DNA from: Leucoraja erinacea
Taxonomy: Eukaryota
Length of the DNA: 64,000 bases
Direction: 5' to 3'
Assembly: GCF_028641065.1 (NCBI RefSeq)
Contig: NC_073384.1
Coordinates: 32,674,001 to 32,738,000 of the forward strand
Of the stretch, positions 1,738 through 62,070 are shown in pieces; the stretch's first letter is position 1; every line of letters starts with the position of its first letter. The notes beneath the pieces were generated by a model. The model saw only the letters and a program-made list of their open reading frames with translations, did not search any database and was not told the origin of the DNA. Made by a program: the position numbers and the translations under genes.

Positions 1738-13033
<11,296 letters not shown>

Positions 13034-23800: not shown

Positions 23801-26800
23801 ACATCAAAGACGTGCATGTTTTTAGGTTAATTGGCTTCTGTAAATTGTTCCTAGTTTGTACAATAGAACTATTGTACATGTAATTGCTGGTTGGCGCAGA
23901 CTAAGTGGGCCGATGGGCCTGTTTCCACTTTGCATCTCTAAGCTAAACTAAACTAATCTTAACAACAGGAACAGGCCCTTCGGTCCGCAATGGCCGTGCC
24001 GAACATGATGCCAAGTTAAACTAATCTCCTCTGCCTGCACGTTACCCTTATTCACTCCATTTCCTGCATATCCCTGTCCTATCCAAAAGTCTCTTCAAAG
24101 CTTGGGCTTGTAGGCTTGACTTTTGGGAGAGGTTGGGACTTTTTTCTTTGGAGTGTAGGAGGCTGAGGAATGACTTTATTAAGATGTACAAGATCATGAG
24201 GGTCATGGATAAAGTGAACGCACATGGTCTTTTCCCCCAGGGTAGAGGATTCTAAACCAAGAGGGCACGGGCTTAAGGTGAGAGGAGAGATTTAAGAGGG
24301 ATCGCAGTGGAATCCGTACTAGTAGTAGTCCGTATCTGGAACCAGCTGCCAGAGGAAGCGGTAGAAGTGGCTACAGTTGTGAGATTTTTCTCTCTGCAGT
24401 TTTAGTTTGCAATATTAATTCAAAATGAATCTCGACAGATGTCAGTGCAGGCTTTTGACATAGGTTGTTTGTGTAACTGTCAAATGTTGCTTTGATTCCT
24501 TTTGTAGGAAGAGCTTCAAGGAACGACCACTCAAACCAGGGAACTGAGTAAAAGACAGAAGGAAATTGGAGCATATATTGAAACTCTACAGCAGAACAAA
24601 ATCCACGGCCAAAGAAACATTGGATCTACTTCAGCATCAAACGGGTAATGGGAGTGAATGAGTATACTCTCCTGTAACTTGCCTCCCAGGCTCACTGGTC
24701 TAGAGTCTCCAGGCTTTTCCCTGAAGCCCTTCTTAAACTGGAGGTGCAACATTAGTCACCCTCCAGTCTTCCAGCACCTCACCTGTCGATCTCAAAGTGA
24801 ATAATGTTGAGAAGTTGACACGATTTTTCTTTCTCCTCGTAGAACGTGGTATTGGGAATACCAGACAACAGGAGAGAATTGTCCAGGAGACCAAGCGCAG
24901 TACTGTAAAATGAATCCTAACCACGAGTGTACACTACACAAACGCTACTCTGTGAGTCTTCCCCACAGCACCTTCCACAAAGGTAAAACTTTCAGGGCAA
25001 CGTCTTCTACACCATGGGTGCATAGGATGCTTTGAAATAGACTTGTATTTAATCCACTCCGCACTGCCCCCCACCCCCACAAAGACACAGTGTTGGAGTA
25101 ACATAGTGGGTCCGCCACATTTTTGGGTTGGGACCTTTCTGCAGATGACGTAGGGGGGAGAAAGCTGGAAAAGAGAGGTAGGGGACGAGATAAAGCCTGG
25201 TAAGTGATAGATGGATACAATAGACAATAGGTGCAGGAGTAGGCCATTCGGCCCTTCGAGCCAGCACCGCCATTCAATAGACAATAGGTGCAGGAGTAGG
25301 CCATTCGGCCCTTCGAGCGAGCACCGCCATTCAATGTGATCATGGCTGATCATCCCAATCAGTACCCCGTTCCTGCCTTCTCCCCATATCCCCTGACTCC
25401 GCTATTTTTAAGAGCCCTATCTAGCTCTCTTTTGAAAGTATCCAGAGAACCGGCCTCCACCGCCCTCTGACGCAGACAATTCCACAGACTCACAACTCTC
25501 TGTGAGAAAAAGTGTTTCCTCCGTTCTAAATTGCTTACCCTTTATTCTTAAACCGTGGCCCCTGGTTCTGGACTCCCCTAACAGGGAACATGTTTCCTGC
25601 CTCTAGCATGTCCAAACCCTTAATAATCTTGTATGTTTCATTAAGATCCCCTCTCATCCTTCTAAATTCCAGAGTATACAAGCACAGCCGCTCCATTCTC
25701 TCAGCATATGACTGTCCAGCCATCCCGGGAATTAACCTTGTGAACCTATGCTCCCTCAACAGCAAGAATGTCTTTCCTCAAATTTGGAGACCAAAATTGC
25801 ACACAATACTCCAGGTGTGGTCTCACTGGGGCCCTGTACGACTACAGAACGACTACATACTCAACTTCTCTTGTTATGAAGGCCAACATGCCATTTGCTT
25901 TCTTCACTGCCTGTTGTACCTGCATTCTTACTTTCATTGACTGATGAAAAAGGACCCCCAGATCACGTTGTAGTTCCCCTTTTCCCAACTTGACACCATT
26001 TAGATAATAATCTTCCTGTTTTTGCTACCAAAGTGGATAACCTCACATTTATCCACATTAAACTGCATCTGCCATGCATCTGCCCACTCACCCAACCTGT
26101 CCAAGTCACCCTGCATTCTCATAGCATCCTCCTCGCAGTTCACACTGCCACCCAGCTTTGTGTCATCTGCAAATTGGCTAATGTTACTTGTAATCCCTTC
26201 ATCTAAATCATTAATATATATTGCAAATAGCTGCGGCCCCAGCACCGATGCTTGCAGTACCCCACTAGTCACTACCTGCCATTCTGAAAGGGACCCGTTA
26301 ATCCCTACTCTTTGTTTCCTGTCAGCCAACTAATTTTCTATCCATGTCAGCTCTCTACCCCCAATACCATGTGTCCTAATTTTGCCCACTAAAATCCTAT
26401 TTGGGACCTTATCAAATGCTTTCTGAATGACCAGGAACACTATATCCATTGGCTCTCCCTTGTCCATTTTCCTAGATACATCCACAAAAAATTTCAGAAG
26501 ATTAGTCAAGCATGATTTTCCCTTCGTAAATCCATGTTCACTTGGACCCATCCTGTCAGTGCTATCCAAATGTGCCGCTATTTCATCTTTCCCACCACCT
26601 ATGTCAGGCTAACTGGTCTATAATTCCCTGTTTTCTCCCACCGTCTTTTCTTAAAAAGTGGGATAACATTAGCTACCCTCCAATCCGCAGGAACTTGTAA
26701 ACCAGCATCTGCATTTCCTTGTACCTCCAAGGAATATCGATGAAAGGGGGATGGTGGGGAGGAGGGTGGAGGGGAGTGGGCAAGGGGAAAGGGAGAAATG

Positions 26801-29800
26801 ATCTTTCCTATCCGATGCACACTCATTCTCATTACCATTCGTGGACTGTGAATGGCACAGTGGCGCAGCGGTAGAGTTGCTGCCTTACAGTGCCAGAGAC
26901 CTGGGTTCGATCCTGACTATGGGTGTTGTTTGTATGGAGTTTGCACATTCTTCCTGTAACCATGTGGGTTTTCTCCAGGTGCTCCAGTTTCCTCCCACAC
27001 TCCAAAGTCATACACATTTGTAGGTTATTTGGCCTCTGTAAATTGTAAACTGTTTCGAGTGAGTGTGTACGTCAGTGCCAGTGTGTGGGGTGCTAGCTGG
27101 TCGGCACAGACTCAATGGGCCGGAGGGTCTGCTTCCACGCTGTGTCTCTAAAGTATAAAGACAACTGGAGACCCAGCATGAGGCGGAACCAAAAGATAAT
27201 GACATCCCAACTCCAGGACCAAGCATTTGCTAAGGTTGACGATGTTTACCGAGGATAGGAGGCTGACTTCTTTGCCTACCCATACTATGGTGTAACAGAT
27301 GTGCTTGTCTTCCAGTTGTGCACAGTGCAGACGTGGATGCAAGGCCAAACTCACCTGTCACTGTTTATCCAAGACATGAGACTGTATCCCCAGCACTGAG
27401 TGAAGGGTTTGAGGACCACGCTGACACTGATAGAATGGACACTTTCGAAGCACTGAACCAAAACAGATGTGCTCCTCGAGAAAGCGAATTAGAAACCAAC
27501 CATCTTACTACAGAGTTGGACAAGAACATCCAACACTTGAAGGAAAAATACCACGGTAACTATTTATTATCTGAACTATTTACTATTTAAGTAAACAAAC
27601 CATGTTCATATGCTGATTAATTGATTGTGAGATACGTCCACCCATCAAGTCCACGCCTACCATCGATCACCCGTTCTGTTATCCCACTTTCTCCTCCCTT
27701 CCCTGCACACTAGGGGCAATTTACAGAAGCCAATTAACCTACAAACCCGCATGTCTTTGGGATGTGGGAGGAAATGGGAGCACCCAGAAGAAACCCAGGC
27801 GGTCACAGGGAGAACATGCAAAATAAAATGGCCTCAATTCATCAATGCAAAGTCAACAGGCTGCCAGATTACAGGGAGGGAGGGGTGGCGTGCAGTGGGG
27901 AGGCTTCAGAATGGAAATCACCTAAGTTGGGAAGGGTGCAGAAGAGATGCACCAGGATGTTCTCTTCACCAGGATTGCGAGCTTGAGTTATTCACCAGGA
28001 TTGCAGGCTTGAGCTATAGGGAGAGGTTGGAGAGGCTGGGACTTTTCATTGGAGCGTAGGAGGCTGAGGGGTGGCCTTATGGAGAAGTACTTCTGAATCT
28101 TTTTGAGTTAGTTACTTGAATGAAATGCAGAAGCCGATAAATAATTATAATCAAAATGACCATATATATATTTTCTAAACAGACTCTGCTCTGCTCTTTC
28201 TGGTCAAGAGGCAGCACACTGTCGTGGAACTGCTGAAGTCAGAGAGACTGTATGCCTTTTACCTCTCACTCATTCTGAAGTCCAATGTTTCCAACAGCGG
28301 AAAGGGCATCACACTCAACGGCAAAAATCTGAGGTATGGTTTGCATAAACCCAATCATAGTTTGCAACGAATAGTTAACTTGTATAGTTACCTTCCTCTC
28401 CTATCCTTTTGCCTCATACTTTCTGGGTTTTTTTAAATCTCTGGCCTATATCCAACCATCTGCTTATCAAACCCCCCTCACCTGTATTCACCTATCACTC
28501 ACCAGGACACAAAGTATTGGAGTAACTCAGTGGGTCAGGCAGCATCTCTGGAGGTGGCGTTTCGGGATCCTACTGCCTGTCCTGTTGATTACTCCAGCAC
28601 TTTGTGTATTAATTAGCATCTGCAGTTCTTTGTTTCTCTCACTCACCAGGCTTTCTCTCTTCCAGCTTTCTTCTCCTCCCCACCACAATCTTTTTTATTT
28701 TATTTTTATTTCAATCTAGACTTTATTCAGGTAATAAATATATACAATACATGAATCATGCGAAAAATTAATCCACCATTTTCGGAGGCTATACAAATTG
28801 TTCAATACAGTCTATATACATTGCTCAAATTTCACAAATCTGTGCCCCACCCGTGCCACTCATGTGGCCCCCTGGCGTGGGATACCTTCTCTTATTTTGA
28901 GGGGCGCCTCCACCATACTGTGCCCCCCATGTCCAGCAGCGGAAGGACTCTAAACTGTGGTCCTCCCCCACCGAGCCTGGGCATTGGCTGCACCGAGCTT
29001 CAGTGCATCCCTCAGCACGTACTCCTGCAGTCTGCAGTGGGCCAGTCGGCAACATTCCCTGACGGACATCTCGCTCCACTGGGTGGTGAACAGCGCTCGG
29101 GCAGACCAAAGAGAGCCTTTCACCGAGTTGATGACCTTCCAGCAGCACTCGATGTCCGTCTCTGAATGTGTCCCTGGGAACAGTCCGTAAATCACAGAGT
29201 CCTCTGTGATGGAGCTGTTCGGAATAAAGCGTTGCAAGGATCCTTGCATACCTCTCCAGATTATACTTCTCCATGTTATGTAATGAACCGGATTTGATAA
29301 AGGACCATGAGGTTAATGAGCCATTAAGAGGCAGTGACCATAACATGGTCAGGTTTAATCTACAATTGGAGAAGGAGTAGATCAGGAACTTGGAGGTGCT
29401 GTCCAGTGTGTTGTCGGCACTGCCGGATCGTCCAGCCCCATCAATGATGCAGTTGAAGTCACCGGCCAGAACGAGCTGCCTGGACGTGGCCAGCATCGGT
29501 GGGAGCTGCAGGAGAACGGCCAGCCGCTCGCTCTGCACGGGTGAGGCGTTCACATTAATCAGCCGGAGCGGAGAACCACGGTACATAACATCCACCACGA
29601 GGAGACGCCCCCAACCACCTCCCTGACCTCAGTGATGGCGAAGTTCCCTCCCCGCAGCAAGATCCCCAGGCAAGAAGCACGACAGTCACTGGCTCCCAAC
29701 CACACCGACAGTCCATGGGGCCACCATCGCGACCACCTCCGATAGCAGCGGAGGTGTGGCAGCCCGCACTCCTGGAGTAGGTCACATCTGCCTTGACCTT

Positions 29801-32800
29801 GGCCAGGTACTGTAAGGCATTTACACATCGTACAGTACTCTTCACACTGCGCACGTTTAAAGATGCCAGTTTGAGCTCCATTGTCTTTAGAGTCACTGAC
29901 CACTCTCTTGTCCCCTCATGCCCACTGCTTTGGTGAATTGCCTCAGCTTTCCTGGGCTCAGGTACTGGGTGCCAGCATCCTCAAGGAGGTGGGTTACCTG
30001 TGGCGCAACCAGAGGTGTCGTTGGGGGGGACCTACTTGTTCCACCCCCTTCTGTGCGCACCGCCCCCTGCATCTCCTGTAGCTGGGGCACGGTGGCTGAT
30101 TCACTGCTCCCGGTATCCCAGTGCTGGGGCCCATTGGCCGCTGCGATGATCCCGGTCTCCAGGGACAGGAGCCCCTCTGCCGCTGCTCTGCTCTCGGTCT
30201 CCTGGGGCTGGGGGACAATCGGCGTAGCCTTTCTCTTTTCTTCCTCTGCCTCCGTCGTTGGGACTTCAAGGTCGCCTCATCCTCTGACGAGGAGAGGTTG
30301 CTGCCATCTGTCTTATTTTTGGACTTACCGGCCCCTTGCAGCCTCGGCTCTTTGGGCTGAACCCTCTGGTGTTTCTTATTCGTCACCATTTTCCATTTCT
30401 CCTACTGTTCCCCCTCCTCCATCAACTCTCCCTCCTGGACAGGGCACTGGGGGTCTCCGTCTGACACTTGGGGGCATGAGGCGGTCGGGCTGTCCTCACC
30501 CCTGTTCCCCCTTTCTGCTGGGGTCTTGGTAGTGGTGGCAGGTTTCTCGCCCACCCTGGGGGTGCTGGCAGCAGCTCCTCTTGTCGCCTGTGCGTAGGTG
30601 CAGGCTCTTTTAGGGCAAGCCCTGTAGAGGTGGCCTGCCTCCCCGCACAGGTTGCAGTTCTTGCTGGCCTGCCAGTCCTTTGTCTCATGGCCCTCCAGCT
30701 TGCAGTTCTTGCCGACAACTGCAGTGCATTGGGCCATCACTTGCCCAGGCTTTTTGCATTTCCTGCACAGCTTGGGTTGCCCCGCGTAGCTCATGTATCC
30801 TCGGTTCCCTCCAATAGCGAAAACCGAGGGAGGGTGGATGATGGCTCCGTTCTTGTCCACCCTCAGCTTTACCTTCACTTGCCACTTGCTTGTCCAAATC
30901 CCAAACAGGTCCTTCACGTCCTCACAGTTCCCTGTTCCCTTGACATAATGAGCAAGGAAGGTGAGGACATCCACTGCGGGCACATGTGGGTTCGACACGT
31001 GCACTGTGATCATCAATTCCTTCTGGGTGGGGGAGCATGAAGAGCGGCTGCACTTTCAGTAGCCACAGCGGAGCTTGGTTCCCCTTCTCGCGGAAGTCTT
31101 CCATCAACTTCTGCCATCCCGTCGGATACATGAAGGTAACACCAAAATATCCGTTACCCGGGAAGTCCTGAAGGCAGTAGATGTCCTTGGCCTCAAATTT
31201 GCAGGCCTCTAGCAAGATTTTCCTCATGAACAGGTCCCATGAGAAGGGAGTCCCCTTGCTCAGGTCCTTTATGCTAACTCTCAGGGTATTTGGGATACCC
31301 TGTACTCCCGCTCCAGTTGCTGCTGCCATTGTGGCTGGATGAGGTGTTAGGTTGGTTACCCAGCCAGCATGGATCCACCTCTAAGCCCGCAGCCGACCGA
31401 CTCCTCGTCACCGATTTCGATCCGAGATCCACAACCCTTGTCCCCAAAGGGTCAAGGCCAGAACTGTTCTAATAAGAGCAGATAGTGTCTTTTACTCAAG
31501 TAGCTCGTCCTGGGAGAACTGCCTTTTTGATCACGGTCTCTCCCCTGCCAGGTAAGTATCCTCCCCACCACAATCAGTCCCAAAAAGGGCCCCGACCGGA
31601 ATCAAGCATTTACAATTCCTTGTGGTCTCCAGTTATCTTTCTCATTTGATTTTTCTCACCTTTGGTCCACAGTGGCGCCCTGCACAGCTCCCTGCGATTA
31701 CTCACACATCTCCACACCACTCTACTGTACACGCTGGAGGAGAGGGTGTGCTGTTGGCAGTGGCAAAGCATTGTTGGGGATATATTCATGAAGCTGCTGA
31801 ACAACCCAGAGGTAAGGGTGAAGCTGGCCTGTTAAATGTGGTCTCGATCGCTTGTTAAATATGTTCCTTGCTGGACAGCATCGCCTGTGATTTATTAGCA
31901 TACAATTACTTTAGACTTCAGAGATACAATGTGGAAACAGGCCCCTCCGCCCTCCACGTCCCCACTGATCAATAATCACCCCATACACTAACACTATCCT
32001 GCACACACTAGGGACAATCTATACTTTTACAGAAGCCAATTTCTTCTTCCTCCAAAACCTATGTCTTTGGGATGTGGGAGGAAACTGGAAAACCCGGAGA
32101 AAACCCACGCGGAGGGTATTCCTCACATGGAGAAGGTACAAACTCCGAACAGACAGCACCCATAGTCGGGATCGAACCCCTACCACTGGCACTGTGAGCT
32201 ACTGTTGCACCACCCTAATTTCTCCCTCTGTTTAGCAAAGTGTTTGTGCATTGCGTTCATATAGAACAGTACTGCACAGGCATTGGCCCTTTGGCCCACG
32301 TTGTCCCTGCTGAACGCAATGCCAAGTTCATAGTCACACAGCATGGAAACAGCTCTTTGGCTCAACTCATCCATGCTGACCAAGACGCACCTTCTACGCT
32401 AGTCCCACCTGCCCGCATTTGGCCCATATCCCTCTAAACCTTTTCTATCCATGTACCTGTCTAAATGTCTGTTAAAATGTTGTGATCGTACCTGCATCAA
32501 CCACCTCCTCTGGCAGCTCAATCTATACACCCACCACCCTCTGTATGAAAAAGTTGCCCCTCAGGTTCCTAATAAATCTTTCTCCTCTCCCCTTAAGCCA
32601 GTGTCCTCATTTTTGATTTCCCTACCCTGGGTAAAGGATGGTGCATTCAACCTGTAGGTTCCCCTCATGATTTTATACATCTCTGTAAGATCTTTTTTGG
32701 GACTCCAAAAGCAGGAAATATACGCAAAAACATGTTACAAGTTGCTTTCACTATTTATTGCTATCGACCAGAATGTTTTATGATGTTGATAGGTTAAACT

Positions 32801-35800: not shown

Positions 35801-38800
35801 CAATGGCTCCCGTGAACCTCCCCCTGTTGACTTGGGTCCCTTGGCACTGTATGTGAAGCTAATAGTTTTAAACTTGGGTTTTAAGATGGACATTGATTTT
35901 AAATTAGATCGTCAAATAGGCGCGGTAGTTAAGTCCAGCTTCTTCATTTAAGGCAGCTGGCAAAGGTGAAGCCCATTCTTGAACGACAGCATTTTGAAAC
36001 AGTAATCCATGCCTTCATCACGTCTTGGCTGGATTACTGTAACGCACTTTATTTTGGAGTTAGCCAATCTTCCCTTGCACGTCTCCAGTTGGTTCAGAAT
36101 GCTGCTGCTCGCCTTTTAACTGGAACACGTAAGAGGGAGCACATAACGCCTATTCTGGCCTCCCTCCACTGGCTGCCTGTGTACTTTAGAGTTCATTTTA
36201 AGATTCTTTTATTTGTTTTTAAATCTTTAAATGGTCTCGCCCCGCCATACCTCTCTGAGCTGCTTCATCCCTACGCTCCTGCTTGGTGCCTCGGGTCAGC
36301 TGATCAGATGCTCCTGGAGGTACCGAGGTCTAAGCGGAAGCTCAGAGGTGATAGAGCCTTCTCTGTTGCTGCTCCAACATTATGGAACACTCTACCTTTG
36401 CACATTAGACAGGCCCCTTCACTGTCCATTTTCAAAACTAATCTTAAAACCCTTTTCTATTCCTTGGCTTTCGACCCTGCATGAGACTTTGCTCCTGTTT
36501 TAGTGTTTCTATTGTTTTTTATTGTTTTTACTGTCTTTTAATGTTTTTATTGTTTTGTTTTATATTTATGATTAGTCATGTACAGCACTTTGTTGCAACA
36601 GTGGTTGTTTTTAAAGTGCTCTATAAATAAAGTTCAGTTCAGTTCAGTTATGTTTGGCTCCAGATTCCAGTGTCTGCAGTTCCTTGTGTCCCTCTGTACA
36701 TTAATTATTTCTCTGCGGCAATTGCTGTCTCTTTCCATAGGACAACTCTTCCAAGTCCAGGCCTGACCTGCTGCTGTTGCTCTTTCAGCCAGTTCATCGC
36801 ATCCAGGAATATATTCTGCTTCTCCAGGTAAATTCTTTGGTATCACAAGGAGTCAGAGCTGTACAGCATGTAAACCTTCAGTCCACCCTGTCCACGCCGA
36901 CCACCTTAGCATACTGGACCAGTCCCATTTGCCTACATTTGGCCCATATCCCGCTAAACCCTTCCTATCCATATATCTGTCCAAATGTTTTTTAAAAGTC
37001 ATAATTAAATCCGTTTCTATAGCTTTGAGAGGGAATCTTATTAATATAATAACCATATAACAATTACAGCACGGAAACAGGCCATCTCGGCCCTACAAGT
37101 CCATGCTGAACAAATTTTTTTCCCCTTAGTCCCACCTGCCTGCAGTCGTACCATAACCCTCCATTCCCTTCTCATCCATATGCCTATCCAATTTATTTTT
37201 AAATGATACCAATGAACCTGCCTCCACCACTTCCACTGGGAGCTCATTCCACACCGCCACCACTCTCTGCGTAAAGAAGTTCCCCCTCATATTACCCCTA
37301 AACTTCTGTCCCTTAATTCTGAAGTCATGTCCCCTTGTTTGAATCTTCCCTATTCTCAAAGGGAAAAGCTTGTCCACATCAACTCTGTCTATCCCTCTCA
37401 TCATTTTAAAGACCTCTATCAGGTCCCCCCTTAACCTTCTGCGCTCCAGAGAATAAAGACCTAACTTATTCAACCTATCTCTGTAACTTAGTTGTTGAAA
37501 CCCAGGCAACATTCTAGTAAATCTCCTCTGTACTCTCTCTATTTTGTTGACATCCTTCCTATAATTTGGCGACCAAAATTGTACCCCATACTCCAGATTT
37601 GGTCTCACCAATGCCTTGTACAATTTTAACATTACATCCCAGCTTCTATACTCAATGCTCCGATTTATAAAGGCTAGCATACCAAAAGCTTTCTTTACCA
37701 CCCTATCTATATGAGATTCCACCTTCAAGGAACTATGCACGGTTATACCCAGATCCCTCTGTTCAACTGTATTCTTCAATTCCCTACCATTTACCATGTA
37801 CGTCCTATTTTGATTTGTCCTGCCAAGGTGTAGCACCTCACATTTATCAGCATTAAACTCCATCTGCCATCTTTCAGCCCATTTTTCCAAATGGCCTAAA
37901 TCACTCTGTAGACTTTGGAAATCCTCTTCATTATCCACAACACCCCTATCTTAGTATCATCTGCATACTTACTAATCCAATTTACCACACCTTCATCCAG
38001 ATCATTGATGTACATGACAAACAACAAAGGACCCAACACAGATCCCTGAGGCACCCCACTAGTCACCTGCCTCCAACCCGATAAACAGCCATCCACCATT
38101 ACCCTCTGGCTTCTCCCATTCAGCCACTGTTGAATCCATCTTGCTATTCCTGCATTTATACCCAACAGTTGAACCTTCTTAACCAACCTTCCATGAGGAA
38201 CGTTGTCAAAGGCCTTACTAAAGTCCATATAGACAACATCCACTGCTTTACCCTCGTCAATTTCCCTAGTAACCGCTTCAAAAAATTCAAGAAGATTAGT
38301 CAAACATGACCTTCCAGGCACAAATCCATGTTGACTGTTCCTAATCAGACCCTGTTTATGTAGATGCTTATATATATTGTCTCTAAGTATCTTTTCCATT
38401 AATTTGCCCACCACTGAAGTCAAACTAACAGGTCTATAATTGCTAGGTTTACTCTTAGAACCCTTTTTAAACAATGGAACAACATGCGCAGTACGCCAAT
38501 CCTCGGGGACTATTCCCGTTTCTAATGACATTTGAAATATTTCTGTCATAGCCCCGGCTATTTCTACACTAACTTCCCTCAATGTCCTAGGGAATATCCT
38601 GTCAGGACCTGGAGACTTATCCACTTTTATATTTTTCAAAAGTGTCAGTACTTCTTTTACTTTGAACCTCATAGTATCCATAGCTACTCTACTAGTTTCC
38701 CTTACCTCACATAATTCAATATCCTTCTCCTTGGTGAATACCGAAGAAAAAAAAATTGTTCAATACCTCCCTCATCTCTTTTGGCTCTGCAGATAGCTGT

Positions 38801-41800: not shown

Positions 41801-44800
41801 GTCTTTGTCGACCAAGATGCCCCATCTACACGGCTCCAACCTGCTGGCATTTGGCCCGTATCGCTCTAAACCTTTCTTATCCATGTACCTGTCCAAATGT
41901 CTTTTAAATGTCGTTATAGTACCAGCCTCAACTACCCCCTCTGGCAGCTCATTCCATATACCCATATGTGAAAATGTTGCCCCCCAGGTTCCCACTAAAT
42001 CTTTCTCCTATCGCCATAAACCTACGTCCTCCAGTTTTTGATCGTGTTTAATAGATGGAGAGTCTTTCTCTAAGCTGTGTGGAGAGAGTAAGTCATTATC
42101 TCTTTATATTTCTGGTGGAACAGAACGTGCTCAGACACACGGAACCAAAACATCCTGACTGTTACCTGCTGCCTATATGTATCCAGCACTTCAGAATCTT
42201 CCTTTCCCAATGCAGCCATTTACTCCGTTATAACGAAGAGCTGCTCAAACAACGCAGGAAACACACAAACAGGTGAGCAACTCAACCACTAGGATTACTG
42301 TCTGGAGAAGGGTCTGGACCTGAAACATCATCTGTCCATTCCCTCCACAGATGCTGCCTGACCCGCCGGGTTCCTACAGCAGCTTTGCTCCAGAATCTAG
42401 CGTCTGCAGTTCCTTGTGCCACCATTATTACAATGACTGTCTCCTCCTTAGGAGGTCCCCGAGCGTTGGGGGTAATCTGCCTCCTCTCTGGGTTGTGTGG
42501 TGAATGCTGAGGGCACCCCGAGAACAGCAGCCTATTCCACAGACGGTACGGGAGTGGTTGATGGGTGGAGGAGGGTCAGTGTGTGAGGGAACACACTCCT
42601 TCACCATTAAGGTGGTTCCACTGTCAGTTAGACACTCGTCCATGCCGACCAATGACCCCCATCTACCCGCGTTTGGCGCATATCCCTCTAAACCTTTCCT
42701 TATCCATGTATTTGTCCAAGGAAGGACACACAAACCACTGGTGTAACTTAGTGGGTCAAGTACCATCCATGGAGAACATGGATAGATGACATTTCGGGTC
42801 AGGAAATGTCACCTATCCATGTTCTCCAGGGATGCTGCCTGACCCACTGAGCTACTCAGCATTTTGTTTGTCTTGCTGTGGTAAACCAGCATCTGCAGTT
42901 CCTTGTTTGTATATGTACCTGTTCAAGCTGTTATTGTAAATGCCTCAACTAACTCCTCTAGCAGCTTATTACATATACTCACCACTCTCTCTGCGAAAAG
43001 GTTTCTATTAAATCTTTGCACTCTCATCTTAAACCTATGTCCTCTGGTTCTTGTATCCCCCTACCCTGGGTAAATGTTTCTGTGCATTCATCATATCTAT
43101 TTCCCTCATGATCTCCCCTCAAGATAACCCTGCACTCCCCTTTAGCTCAGATCCTTGAGTGCCTGCAACATCCTTCTCTGTACTCTTTCCAACGTCATGG
43201 CATCTATCCTACACAGGGTGACCAAACATGATAGAACACAATAGTGGCATCTGTCCATGTACCTGATCAAATATTCTTTTAAAAGCCGGATTCTGCCTCA
43301 ATTACCTCCTCTGACAGTTGTTCCATTTTCCCACCACCCACTCTGTTTGATTTGGTTCTTAGAATAAGTAATAGGATCAACGCAGTAAAGTAATTAAAGC
43401 CAAGGCTTTTATTTTGATTTGAGGCACAGGATGACGGCGGTCCAACAGACCAAGACGAGAGGCACTGAGCAGATCCAATGTCCGAGGTTGGACGAAACAC
43501 CCAGCAGACACAAAAGACTCGATAAACTTGACCACGGCCTACTGTGCACCAGCGACCTTGGGCTGGAGTACAGATCTCCACCAGCAAAGGTGGCCTCAAA
43601 GACAGAACCTCTGCCCAGGAAAACCAAGGACGAGTTCAATGTGAGCAAGACAAGATCCACCTTCAGTCAACCAGACAAGAGCTCAATCATCACTAATCCA
43701 AAATGCTCCTCAGTGAACTGTGGAAAGAACCTTTCTCCTGACACCCACGATTTAATGTATGGAGCCTCGAGAGGAAAGACAGGATATGAAAGTCCAGTTG
43801 ACCTTGAAGATGCAGAATACATTCACGAAGCCTCGTGTTTAGTCGAGAGCTCGGTCCCATCTTCTAACTCCAGTTTGGACGTACATTTCACAAAAACGTT
43901 GGACTACATTTCTGCCAGCGAGTCGCAAGCCATAGATTACCCATCACAGCTCACGGCCACACACCCTGCCGGCCAAGAAGATCACAACAAGGAGTTCCGG
44001 CTCCACTGCCATGAAGCAAACATTGACCTGCGTGATGTTCCCAAATCCAAGGGCTTTTCCAGTAAAGTTTTCACACCAGCCCCTCGTGACTATCTGAACT
44101 TTCCCGTCTCCTTAATGCTAACCAACTCTGATAGCCCATCTTTGAAAACCAAAGTATTTGACTCATCTCAGATCAGTACATCGAGGATGAAAAACTCCCA
44201 AAAGGAAATCTCTGCCTCATACAAATCCAAAGCTTCAGATGTATGGATGGAATCAGAAAAAGTAATGTACCCATCTTAATTCTCTTATCTAGATAATCCT
44301 GTGGTCTCGAACTCAAAATTCCTAACTAAAGAGGTATGGAGTAAGTCAGCTGTTTCAGACAAGAGTGATGAAGTTGGTGCAAGGTTAAGGTAAAACTCCG
44401 ATTATCTGTTGTCTAATTGTTTGGAAATCCTGATGGCTCGGTCCATAATGTGTCGGTGAGTCATAGAATCTGCTGGGAGTTATAGAGAATGTGGGCGAAT
44501 ATTTACAGGAAACATCAATGGGATGGGATTCATTCATGAACCAGCATAGACTCCAGGGAAGGTACACAAAAATGCTGGAGAAACTGAGCGGGTGCAGCAG
44601 CATCAATGGAGCGAAGGAAATAGGCAACGTTTCGGGCTGAAACCCTACTTCAGTCTGAAGTAGGGTTTCGGCCCGAAACGTTGCCTATTTCCTTCGCTCC
44701 ATTGATGCTGCTGCACCCGCTCAGTTTCTCCAGCATTTTTGTGTACCTTCGATTTTCTAGCATCTGCAGTTCCGTCTTAAACACATAGACTCAAGGGAGT

Positions 44801-60600: not shown

Positions 60601-62070
60601 AAGGCCGCGGACACCAACAGGATTAACAAACTCATCAGGAAGGCTGGCCCCGTCCTGGGGGCGGAGTTGGATTCATGGCTGATGATCTTGGAGGGGAGGA
60701 TGCTCCTCAACTGTGGAGCATCTTGGACAACACAACTCACCCCCTCCATGACACACTAGTCAACCTGAGGAGCACCTTCAGCAACAGACTGGTTCTACAA
60801 AGATGCAGTACAGAACACCACAAGAGATCCTTTCTCCCTGTGGCTATCAAACTCTACAACTCCTCCCCCTTTTGTCATGGACTAGACTGACTCCCCTCCC
60901 CAAATCTTTGCACATCCCCAATCCTTTCCACTCGTCACTTTAATTTCATATATCTTGTGTTTTATGACTGGTGGCAGATCAATTTCATTCCTGGGATAAA
61001 TAAAGCTCAATCGTATCGTATAATTGTGCTGCTACAAATAAAACTTTCATCGTTCTGTTTTCCATACATAAGAAAATTAAATATTCTTGATTCTTGGATT
61101 CACATTCTCAGTTTATGTGTACGGTAAATGTGTAAAATGTGTATACATTTGTTTTCAGAAACAAGGAACTGTAGATTGTAGTTTACTAAAGAAGACAAAG
61201 TACTGGAGTAACTCAGTGGGTCAGGCAGCATCTCTGGAGAACATGGATAGGTGACGTTTAGGGTCAGGATCAGACTGAAGAAGGGCGAGTTACTAATAGC
61301 AGGGTGACCAAAACGGAATACAGTACTTCAAGTGTGGCCACACCAATTTCTTTATCTGGCCTGTGCTCCCACTAATGGCCCTTATACATGGGTCTATGTG
61401 CATTCATTATCATTGTTATGAGATGTCTAAAATGGAATTGTGGAGTTATTAACTTGGAGTACCATGAGGGAAGGCATACATCCAAACACTTGCTACCCAG
61501 TTCAGTCCAGTTCTGGAAGAAGGAACACTATATTTCACAAGTCCGCCTGAACTAAATATGCACCCAGAGCAAAAAACATCATATCTGCTATTGGCTTCTA
61601 GCTTGTATATTGGGCAACTTCATTTCCCCGGTCAAAGCATGTAAAGAGGCCACATATTAATTAAGGAAACAGTCTCCAAAACATTTATGGCGTAATGGTC
61701 ATGGTAATCAGTCACTATTGCTATTCAGTTCCTAGCTACTTTCAGCAGCTTTGTTTTGAGGTTAAAAAGTAATTAAAGTTCACAGCGTACTTGAATTGAA
61801 CGGACTCGCTGGGTCAGAGTCGCCAAAGACACTGCAGACGTCTGTTGAGCTGGATGCTGCTGAAGCCGGTGGTGGGGTCAGGGGCGTGCGTGGGGAGTTT
61901 GGTGCCGACGCCGTGCTCTCAGCCTCATTCTCCGTGATGCGGCTGTAACTGATTTTACGCGGCTCCTGCAGGAGTGGCGTGGGATGCCCGCGCAGGGTGC
62001 CTGACCCCGGATGCCGAGGATTCGATGGACGGACTCCCGGAGACTTCAGCGTGTAATTAAACTTCTTTGC
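57151..62070 (-). CDS. SOS1: Son of sevenless homolog 1, C-terminal proline-rich region, partial: complement join(62070-61791,59502-59458,58762-58641,57642-57151); gene continues beyond the window
   Basis: Peptides match recalled human SOS1 C-terminus ([63 protein letters not shown]); GT-AG sites and phases consistent. Confidence 0.96.
58641..58762 (-). CDS. SOS1: SOS1 penultimate exon ([28 protein letters not shown])
   Basis: tcacAG / AAG|GTGAGC; 122 nt, phase 1-0. Confidence 0.95.
59458..59502 (-). CDS. SOS1: SOS1 45-nt exon ([15 protein letters not shown])
   Basis: ttttcttccacAG / A|GTTAGT; matches the recalled human 15-aa segment SNDTVFIQVTLPHGP in length and sequence. Confidence 0.85.
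60040..61021 (+). mobile_element. Rex1/Babar LINE 3' fragment in a SOS1 intron
   Basis: [50 protein letters not shown]; (ATCGT)n tail. Confidence 0.88.
61791..62070 (-). CDS. SOS1: SOS1 exon ([19 protein letters not shown]...[17 protein letters not shown])
   Basis: gttttAG / A|GTACGC; 280 nt; [10 protein letters not shown] and [16 protein letters not shown] conserved. Confidence 0.95.

What the first reader, a model, noticed from the sequence alone, without database searches (positions are those of the whole stretch)
28675..31575. Tx1-clade retrotransposon carrying a U1 snRNA head inside its target-site duplication
Seen: a 2869-bp minus-strand element bounded by a perfect 16-bp TSD begins exactly at U1 snRNA nucleotide 1 (ATACTTACCTGGCAGGGGAG), follows U1 for 56 nt, then runs into a 5' UTR, CCHC ORF1 and ORF2 remnants. 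The U1 piece is inside the TSDs and the flank is a Penelope remnant, so it was retrotransposed with the element rather than being the local target. Established: some Tx1-clade families are sequence-specific for multicopy small-RNA genes (Keno targets U2 snRNA); snRNA-headed SINEs (SINEU) and U6-L1 chimeras are known. Inference: this may be a U1-targeting Tx1 family whose master copies sit in U1 genes near nt 56 and use the U1 promoter, or a family with a stably captured U1 head. I do not know whether this has been described in chondrichthyans.
Basis: partly seen in the sequence, partly recalled or inferred. Interest (0 to 1): 0.85.

Follow-up and report, generated by a model that had tools for sequence, protein, structure and literature searches.

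The report
Dead skate LINE with U1 head
A broken jumping gene of the Tx1/L1 type in a skate genome starts with the first 56 bases of the U1 splicing RNA, a kind of chimera already described for crocodilian Tx1 elements, so it is a new example of a known oddity and not a new mechanism.

Summary
A 2869-bp minus-strand element (28691-31559) lies between exact direct repeats of 16 nt, or 17 with one ambiguous A. It begins at U1 snRNA nucleotide 1 and follows the Rfam U1 model to about position 56. Then come a 174-nt leader, a ZCCHC3-type ORF1 (two RNA-binding domains plus a CCHC knuckle), endonuclease fragments, a deletion of the whole reverse transcriptase, the ORF2 C-terminus, AATAAA and an A-rich tail. 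The flanks hold no remainder of a U1 gene, so the head was inserted with the element.

Kojima 2015 (PMC4494074) already reports Tx1 families with U1 heads in crocodilians. The U1 part of the related SINEU-2 ends at nt 53-58, about the same break as here. Those families do not target U1 genes.

One-off chimera, inherited head and U1-gene master copy therefore all remain open. An unchecked first-reader note of this scan (s1-910262) reports a second Tx1 copy with a U1+U2 head on another piece of this genome.

Verdict: new member of a known kind, moderate-to-low interest.

The parts
31560..31575 (-). Upstream target-site duplication (16 nt; 17 if the ambiguous A at 31559 is counted)
   Evidence: Exact direct repeat with 28674-28690; sequence read.
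31504..31559 (-). U1 snRNA-derived head, U1 nt 1 to about 56: the 5' splice-site recognition end plus stem-loop I. It has no Sm site and no stem-loops II-IV.
   Evidence: cmscan RF00003, E 1.8e-8, high posterior for model positions 1-56 only. The 20-nt start is unique in the window, 0 of 100 shuffles.
31330..31503 (-). 174-nt leader between the U1 head and the ORF1 ATG. I presume it is the LINE's 5' UTR; this was not checked against other copies.
   Evidence: No Rfam match at E <= 0.1 when scanned without the head.
30261..31329 (-). ORF1: ATG at 31329, ZCCHC3-type RNA-binding domain 1, a frameshift between 31039 and 31034, RNA-binding domain 2 plus CCHC knuckles, a premature stop at 30402. Homology to skate ORF1 continues to 30261.
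   Evidence: Pfam PF23057 E 4e-14, PF23058 E 7e-24, zf-CCHC_2 E 3e-4. tblastn with P0004 and P0002. Alignment A1.
29383..29881 (-). ORF2 N-terminus: apurinic-type endonuclease, residues 2-166 of full-length relative P0098, spread over three reading frames
   Evidence: tblastn pieces 29881-29777, 29789-29607, 29607-29383; 43-52% identity. Three-frame translation.
29262..29382 (-). About 120 nt with no match, at the internal deletion that removed the rest of the endonuclease and the whole reverse transcriptase (about residues 167-1029 of P0098)
   Evidence: Gap between the tblastn pieces. No other copy in the window.
28950..29261 (-). ORF2 C-terminal end, with its stop codon
   Evidence: tblastn with P0009 70% and P0011 61% identity. 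phmmer: 89 proteins at E <= 1e-3.
28691..28949 (-). 3' UTR with AATAAA at 28727-28722 and an A-rich tail at 28711-28691
   Evidence: Sequence read. 84% identical to a second 3' end at 10695-10864.
28675..28690 (-). Downstream target-site duplication

Best explanation
This is a dead, internally deleted copy of a Tx1-like (L1-superfamily) LINE of skates. Its U1(1-56) head was joined to the LINE at the RNA/cDNA level and inserted together with it by target-primed reverse transcription. Shown: head, leader, ORFs and A-rich tail form one inserted unit between 16-nt duplications at a site that is not a U1 gene. Inferred: the head arose when the LINE's reverse transcriptase, on reaching the 5' end of the LINE RNA, switched template onto U1 snRNA and copied it to its first nucleotide. 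This happened either during this insertion or in an ancestor copy that passed the head on. Kojima proposed the same process for the U1/U2 heads of crocodilian SINEU, and Tx1-Mar families carry the same heads. The head carries no snRNA promoter (that lies upstream of U1 genes) and no Sm site. I therefore take it for a passenger with no demonstrated function, not a promoter module.
For: The unit is bounded by exact repeats and starts at U1 nt 1. There is no U1 remainder in either flank and no other snRNA fragment in the window at E <= 0.1. AATAAA plus an A-rich tail at the 3' end indicates a polyadenylated RNA intermediate. [quoted passage not shown] An unchecked first-reader note reports another Tx1 copy with a U1+U2 head elsewhere in this genome (s1-910262), which would fit recurrent addition.
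Against: Only one copy was examined, so the template switch is inferred, not shown. A transcript started at the U1 promoter of a master copy sitting in a U1 gene would also begin exactly at U1 nt 1 and give the same structure. A switch onto an internal position of U1 (nt ~56), and not its 3' end, differs from the classical U6-L1 chimeras. A shared break point in skates and crocodilians could equally point to an old target site in U1. I did not see Kojima's figure 1B or the supplements, so the crocodilian head's exact extent is taken from the text only.
Confidence: 0.5

Rival explanations
1. 5' transduction from a master copy in a U1 gene, with or without true target specificity. A progenitor LINE sits in a U1 gene after nt ~56 and is transcribed from the external U1 promoter, so its RNA starts at U1 nt 1. 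Copies that land outside U1 genes, like this one, keep the U1(1-56) head.
For: The head starts exactly at the U1 transcription start. Tx1-clade families are often sequence-specific and Keno targets U2 snRNA genes (PMC4494074 introduction). Crocodilian snRNA-headed Tx1-Mar families cluster with Keno. Kojima discusses transcription of such elements from flanking promoters and co-transcription with targets (section 20). A similar break near nt 53-58 in crocodilian heads could mark an old insertion site.
Against: This copy and the one related 3' end in the window are in unrelated, non-U1 sites. No U1-targeting non-LTR family turned up in 4 literature searches. Only Dada DNA transposons are reported in U1 genes, and at another site (PMC3706591). 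The U1-headed crocodilian families prefer a mariner transposon or LTR elements.
Confidence: 0.25
2. The head is a stable, selected module of an active (sub)family. The 5' splice-site-recognition sequence plus stem-loop I would give the LINE RNA some advantage, for example binding of U1-70K or altered processing, so the same ~56-nt module is kept or regained in distant vertebrates.
For: Stem-loop I is nearly intact in the cmscan alignment, and the first 11 nt match the consensus. Similar head length is reported for crocodilian SINEU-2, whose head the crocodilian Tx1 heads resemble.
Against: There are no data on other copies, on expression or on conservation. This copy is dead. Kojima found no evidence of a promoter or other function for such heads. 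The fragment lacks the Sm site needed for snRNP assembly (nothing reliable beyond position ~56).
Confidence: 0.1
3. Chance or artefact: the repeat and the U1 match are coincidental, or the junction is an assembly error.
For: None found. The region has no N.
Against: The 17-nt exact repeat sits precisely at the A-rich tail and at U1 nt 1. U1 E-value 1.8e-8. 0 of 100 shuffles match the 20-mer.
Confidence: 0.02

Closest known systems
U1-headed Tx1 families of crocodilians (Tx1-2_Crp, Tx1-2B_Crp, Tx1-4_AMi; Kojima 2015, PMC4494074)
   Same: A Tx1-type LINE whose 5' end is a U1 snRNA-derived sequence. The related SINEU-2 head ends at nt 53-58, about where this one ends (~56).
   Different: The host is a skate, not a crocodilian. 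Here the head is known from one dead copy, not from a family consensus. No mariner target preference is seen. Relationship to the Tx1-Mar/Keno group could not be tested because the RT is deleted.
SINEU (SINEU-1/2/3), snRNA-headed SINEs mobilised by Tx1-Mar
   Same: A U1 or U2 5' fragment serves as head of a retroposon. The heads were added recurrently, ascribed to template switching.
   Different: SINEU elements are short and non-coding. This element keeps ORF1 and ORF2 remnants and has a LINE 3' UTR.
Keno (U2 snRNA gene-specific Tx1-clade LINE)
   Same: A Tx1-type LINE associated with a spliceosomal snRNA sequence.
   Different: Keno copies lie inside U2 genes. This copy lies outside any snRNA gene, and its snRNA piece is inside the duplication.
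U6-L1 and other snRNA-L1 template-switch chimeras of mammals (Buzdin 2002 and Garcia-Perez 2007, as cited in PMC4494074)
   Same: snRNA 5' part plus LINE 3' part, one poly(A)-type end, one pair of target-site duplications.
   Different: Classical U6 chimeras carry full-length U6 joined to a 5'-truncated L1. Here U1 is cut at nt ~56 and the LINE part reaches upstream of the ORF1 ATG.

Membership tests
Tx1 clade / L1 superfamily non-LTR retrotransposon | ORF2 with an N-terminal apurinic-type endonuclease | tested here: met
   Residues 2-166 of full-length relative P0098 (precomputed Pfam PF03372/PF14529) match 29881-29383 at 43-52% identity, in three frames. Pfam itself gave no hit on the broken pieces.
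Tx1 clade / L1 superfamily non-LTR retrotransposon | Reverse transcriptase domain that groups with Tx1 in an RT phylogeny | tested here: not met
   The RT is deleted in this copy, so no RT tree is possible. Proxy only: relative P0098 scores 720 bits, 40% identity, with a Danio protein that NCBI names 'transposon TX1 uncharacterized 149 kDa protein', against 272 bits with human L1 ORF2p in the PDB. That NCBI name is also given to a plant L1 (P0190), so it is weak evidence for the clade.
Tx1 clade / L1 superfamily non-LTR retrotransposon | ORF1 with RNA-binding domains and CCHC zinc knuckle | tested here: met
   PF23057, PF23058 and zf-CCHC_2. That this is the ORF1 type of Tx1 is recalled, not taken from a call.
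Tx1 clade / L1 superfamily non-LTR retrotransposon | A-rich 3' end and target-site duplication from target-primed reverse transcription | tested here: met
snRNA-headed Tx1 family in the sense of Kojima 2015 | The U1-derived sequence is part of the family consensus, i.e. shared by independent 5'-complete copies | not testable with these tools
No skate DNA in the other collections.
snRNA-headed Tx1 family in the sense of Kojima 2015 | A U1-derived sequence at the very 5' end of a Tx1-type element | tested here: met
   for this one copy.
snRNA-gene-specific Tx1 (Keno-like, here for U1) | Copies inserted at one site inside the snRNA gene, with the gene's remainder in the 3' flank | tested here: not met
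   No U1 match at E <= 0.1 in 1-31527 or 31564-64000. The flank carries an abundant ~50-nt repeat core instead. This holds for this copy only; the family as a whole was not tested.
U6-L1-type template-switch chimera | Full-length snRNA joined to a LINE 5'-truncated at an arbitrary point, within one duplication | tested here: not met
   U1 stops at about nt 56 of 164-166. The LINE part includes the conserved ORF1 start (compare P0004) plus 174 nt upstream.
SINEU | Short non-coding retroposon with an snRNA head | tested here: not met
   2869 bp with ORF1 and ORF2 remnants.

The most novel reading that the evidence does not exclude
A U1(1 to ~56) head is a recurrent or ancient attribute of Keno-related Tx1 LINEs across jawed vertebrates, from skates to crocodilians, and always breaks just after stem-loop I. 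It would then be either the footprint of ancestors that lived in U1 genes and were transcribed from U1 promoters, or a module that benefits the LINE RNA, for example through the 5' splice-site-recognition sequence and the U1-70K binding loop. In a skate it would also seed perfect antisense 5' splice sites into host introns.
Probability: 0.15. Interest if true: 0.7.

Novelty: new member of a known kind. Interest (0 to 1): 0.33.

Why it matters
If the head is shared by a skate family, snRNA-headed Tx1 LINEs would extend from crocodilians to cartilaginous fish. The common break near U1 nt 56 would then call for a mechanistic explanation: a preferred template-switch site, or an old target site. 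That bears on how LINEs and SINEs acquire heads and on how promoter-less heads can persist. As a single dead copy, the element has no evident consequence beyond placing the complement of the U1 5' end, which is a consensus splice donor, on the other strand of the locus.

Tried and rejected
**Other snRNA pieces in the window.** The gathering scan found 0. Permissive scans of 1-31527 and 31564-64000 at E <= 0.1 found 0 snRNA matches. The 6 matches listed are microRNA-family hits, 5 of them on one stretch at 44566-44742.

**Other copies in the window.** Local blastn of the element found only a 171-bp 3'-end match at 10695-10864, 84% identical. Its flanks do not align with those of the main element, so there is no shared target, with n = 2.

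**Other copies in public data.**
- The look-up of sequencing runs listed 24 runs. 20 hold part of the 3.5-kb stretch, none holds half of its words, the organisms are coded A-G, there are 11 studies, and none is on record as RNA. Nothing could be laid, so I cannot say which part they hold.
- The ORF1 search found 8 proteins among 62 candidates: 6 from cartilaginous fish (skates, a ray, sharks), one from Amia calva and one unnamed ENA protein. Their DNA could not be fetched.
- The metagenome scan gave 2 loci of a distant relative (37-51% identity) with no snRNA match at E <= 1.
- Viral-contig scans gave nothing.
- The search of earlier findings by sequence was blank.

**Naming ORF2 relatives.** Of 10 clusters looked up, 5 are named 'uncharacterized', 3 carry only gene-model ids and 2 have no name.

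**Literature.** 7 searches listed no U1-headed or U1-targeting LINE in cartilaginous fish. These are search listings only, in an open-access library. Repbase/Dfam and the supplements of PMC4494074 were not available and may hold such families.

**Rejected idea.** By eye, the insertion site does not resemble the U1 sequence around nt 56, so it gives no hint of off-target cleavage at a U1-like site. This is weak, with n = 1.
Full report
**What is there**

On the minus strand, the window holds an inserted unit from 31559 down to 28691 (2869 bp). It lies between exact direct repeats at 31559-31575 and 28674-28690 (17 of 17 nt). The innermost base of the repeat is also the first base of the U1 match, so the target-site duplication is 16 nt, or 17 with one ambiguous A.

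That string occurs once in 64 kb and in 0 of 100 shuffles. A permissive Rfam scan of 31300-31700 gives U1 (RF00003) on the minus strand at E 1.8e-8 and 38.8 bits, under the gathering score of 69.5. High posterior probability is confined to model positions 1 to about 56. These cover the 5' splice-site recognition end and an almost fully paired stem-loop I. Beyond that the alignment is forced through large insertions and deletions. The gathering-threshold scan of the whole window finds nothing, as expected for a fragment.

**Anatomy downstream of the head**

- **Leader:** 174 nt, 31503-31330.
- **ORF1:** it starts at the ATG at 31329, whose N-terminus resembles that of a full-length ray ORF1 (P0004). 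It has ZCCHC3-type RNA-binding domain 1 (PF23057, E 4e-14), a frameshift between 31039 and 31034, RNA-binding domain 2 (PF23058, E 7e-24) and CCHC knuckles. A premature stop lies at 30402, where the thorny-skate relative P0002 reads on; homology continues to 30261.
- **ORF2 start:** at 29881. Residues 2-166 of the full-length relative P0098 match at 43-52% identity over three frames, down to 29383.
- **Deletion:** about 120 unmatched nt sit at an internal deletion that removed the rest of the endonuclease and the entire reverse transcriptase.
- **ORF2 end:** the last ~100 residues are at 29261-28953, 70% identical to a stingray protein (P0009).
- **3' UTR:** AATAAA at 28727-28722 and an A-rich tail at 28711-28691.

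The copy is dead and could not move by itself.

**The head came in with the element**

Neither flank contains the rest of a U1 gene or any other snRNA fragment. Permissive Rfam scans of 1-31527 and 31564-64000 gave no snRNA match at E <= 0.1. The downstream flank carries a ~50-nt core that recurs in 38 further local matches in the window. One of these lies at 3715-3750, where another first-reader note places an abundant Penelope-derived repeat. I did not verify the Penelope label.

**What kind of LINE it is**

ORF1 relatives at E <= 1e-3 number 8 of 62 candidates. The closer ones (48-82% identity in alignment A1) come from skates, a ray and sharks. The two most distant are from Amia calva and an unnamed ENA contig.

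The C-terminal ORF2 piece finds 89 proteins at E <= 1e-3. Ten clusters were looked up: five are named 'uncharacterized', three carry only gene-model ids and two have no name.

The full-length relative P0098 has endonuclease, RT and zf-RVT domains (precomputed Pfam). Its nearest solved structure is human L1 ORF2p (272 bits). It is closer to a zebrafish protein that NCBI names 'transposon TX1 uncharacterized 149 kDa protein' (720 bits; 40% identity). That name is also applied to a plant L1, so it is weak evidence. Because the RT is missing from this copy, I accept 'Tx1-like, L1 superfamily' but did not prove clade membership.

**What is known**

I read sections 12, 16, 17 and 20 of Kojima 2015 (PMC4494074) and passages of sections 3, 10, 15 and 19. 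I did not see the figures or supplements. The paper states the following:

- Some crocodilian Tx1-Mar families have U1- or U2-derived sequences at their 5' ends. [quoted passage not shown]
- These heads match those of the SINEU SINEs.
- 26 SINEU-2 copies gained U1 5' extensions in multiple independent events, with break points within 22 nt of each other.
- Template switching is the favoured origin.
- The U1/U2 junction of SINEU-2 lies at nt 53-58.
- No promoter function of the heads is evident.
- Tx1-Mar clusters with the U2-targeting Keno but prefers a mariner transposon or LTR elements.

The kind 'Tx1 LINE with a U1 head' is therefore in print, and the break near nt 56 here is about the same.

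Seven searches (listings only) showed no such element, and no U1-gene-targeting LINE, in cartilaginous fish. In U1 genes only Dada DNA transposons are reported, at another site (PMC3706591 passages). Repbase/Dfam could not be consulted.

**What could not be done**

The decisive test is whether other 5'-complete copies share the junction. It failed for want of access:

From then on I worked only beside that stretch.
- The metagenome scan returned two loci of a distant relative without any snRNA match.
- Viral-contig scans were blank.
- The look-up of sequencing runs shows that 20 of 24 listed runs, from coded organisms A-G in 11 studies, hold parts of the 3.5-kb stretch, none half of it. This fits a repeat family shared among related species, but I cannot say which parts they hold.

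The window's only other related sequence is a 3' end at 10695-10864 (84% identity). It may be the tail of a ~320-bp unit with its own 14-nt duplication. Its flanks are unrelated to those of the main element, so with n = 2 there is no sign of a common target.

Unchecked first-reader notes of this scan mention, on other pieces of the same genome, a Tx1 LINE with a U1+U2 head (s1-910262) and U1/U2 fragments inside DIRS elements. A follow-up note on one DIRS case also chose template switching (s1-877335). These are leads, not support.

**Reading**

| Explanation | Probability |
|---|---|
| Head added at the cDNA stage by template switching onto U1 snRNA, in this event or in an ancestor copy | about 0.5 |
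| Transcription of a master copy from the promoter of a U1 gene it sits in, with or without true U1 targeting | about 0.25 |
| A selected head module | about 0.1 |
| Chance or artefact | about 0.02 |

The first two predict the same structure in a single copy. They differ in what the genome-wide set of copies and the U1 loci look like.

**Verdict**

This is a new member, in a new host lineage, of a known kind, and interest is moderate to low unless the genome-wide census shows a shared junction or U1-resident masters.

Noticed in passing
window 10694-11014 (minus strand): A unit of about 320 bp whose last ~170 bp are 84% identical to the LINE's 3' UTR and tail. It appears flanked by a 14-nt direct repeat (about 11015-11028 and 10680-10693, read by eye). 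It could be a short non-autonomous partner (SINE-like) or a 5'-truncated copy of a sister subfamily. It has no Rfam match.
   Followed up: partly
window 28504-28554 and 38 further local matches (e.g. 1226-1273, 61195-61239, 3715-3750): A ~50-nt core is repeated throughout the window on both strands. It coincides with what another first-reader note calls an abundant Penelope-derived repeat with a hammerhead core. I did not check the Penelope label.
   Followed up: partly
window 31504-31559, plus strand: Because the U1 5' end is complementary to splice donors, the opposite strand of the head reads as a consensus 5' splice site. Another first-reader note (s1-909347) raises a cryptic exon in the host gene. 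I did not examine this.
   Followed up: no
protein P0007 (Rhinoraja longicauda): This annotated 'histone H3-like' protein begins with about 65 residues of the same ORF1 RNA-binding domain fused to histone H3. Either the gene model runs from a Tx1-like ORF1 fragment into a histone gene, or an element is inserted at a histone locus.
   Followed up: no
window 26000-26840 and 38007-38753 (minus strand): Reverse-transcriptase fragments of other LINEs, 25-28% identical to P0098 and with an FADDTKL-type motif. They are unrelated to the element studied.
   Followed up: no
window 44566-44742: A stretch that matches microRNA family models equally on both strands (MIR6457, about 105 bits, below gathering). 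It is probably a palindromic or simple repeat, not a microRNA gene.
   Followed up: no
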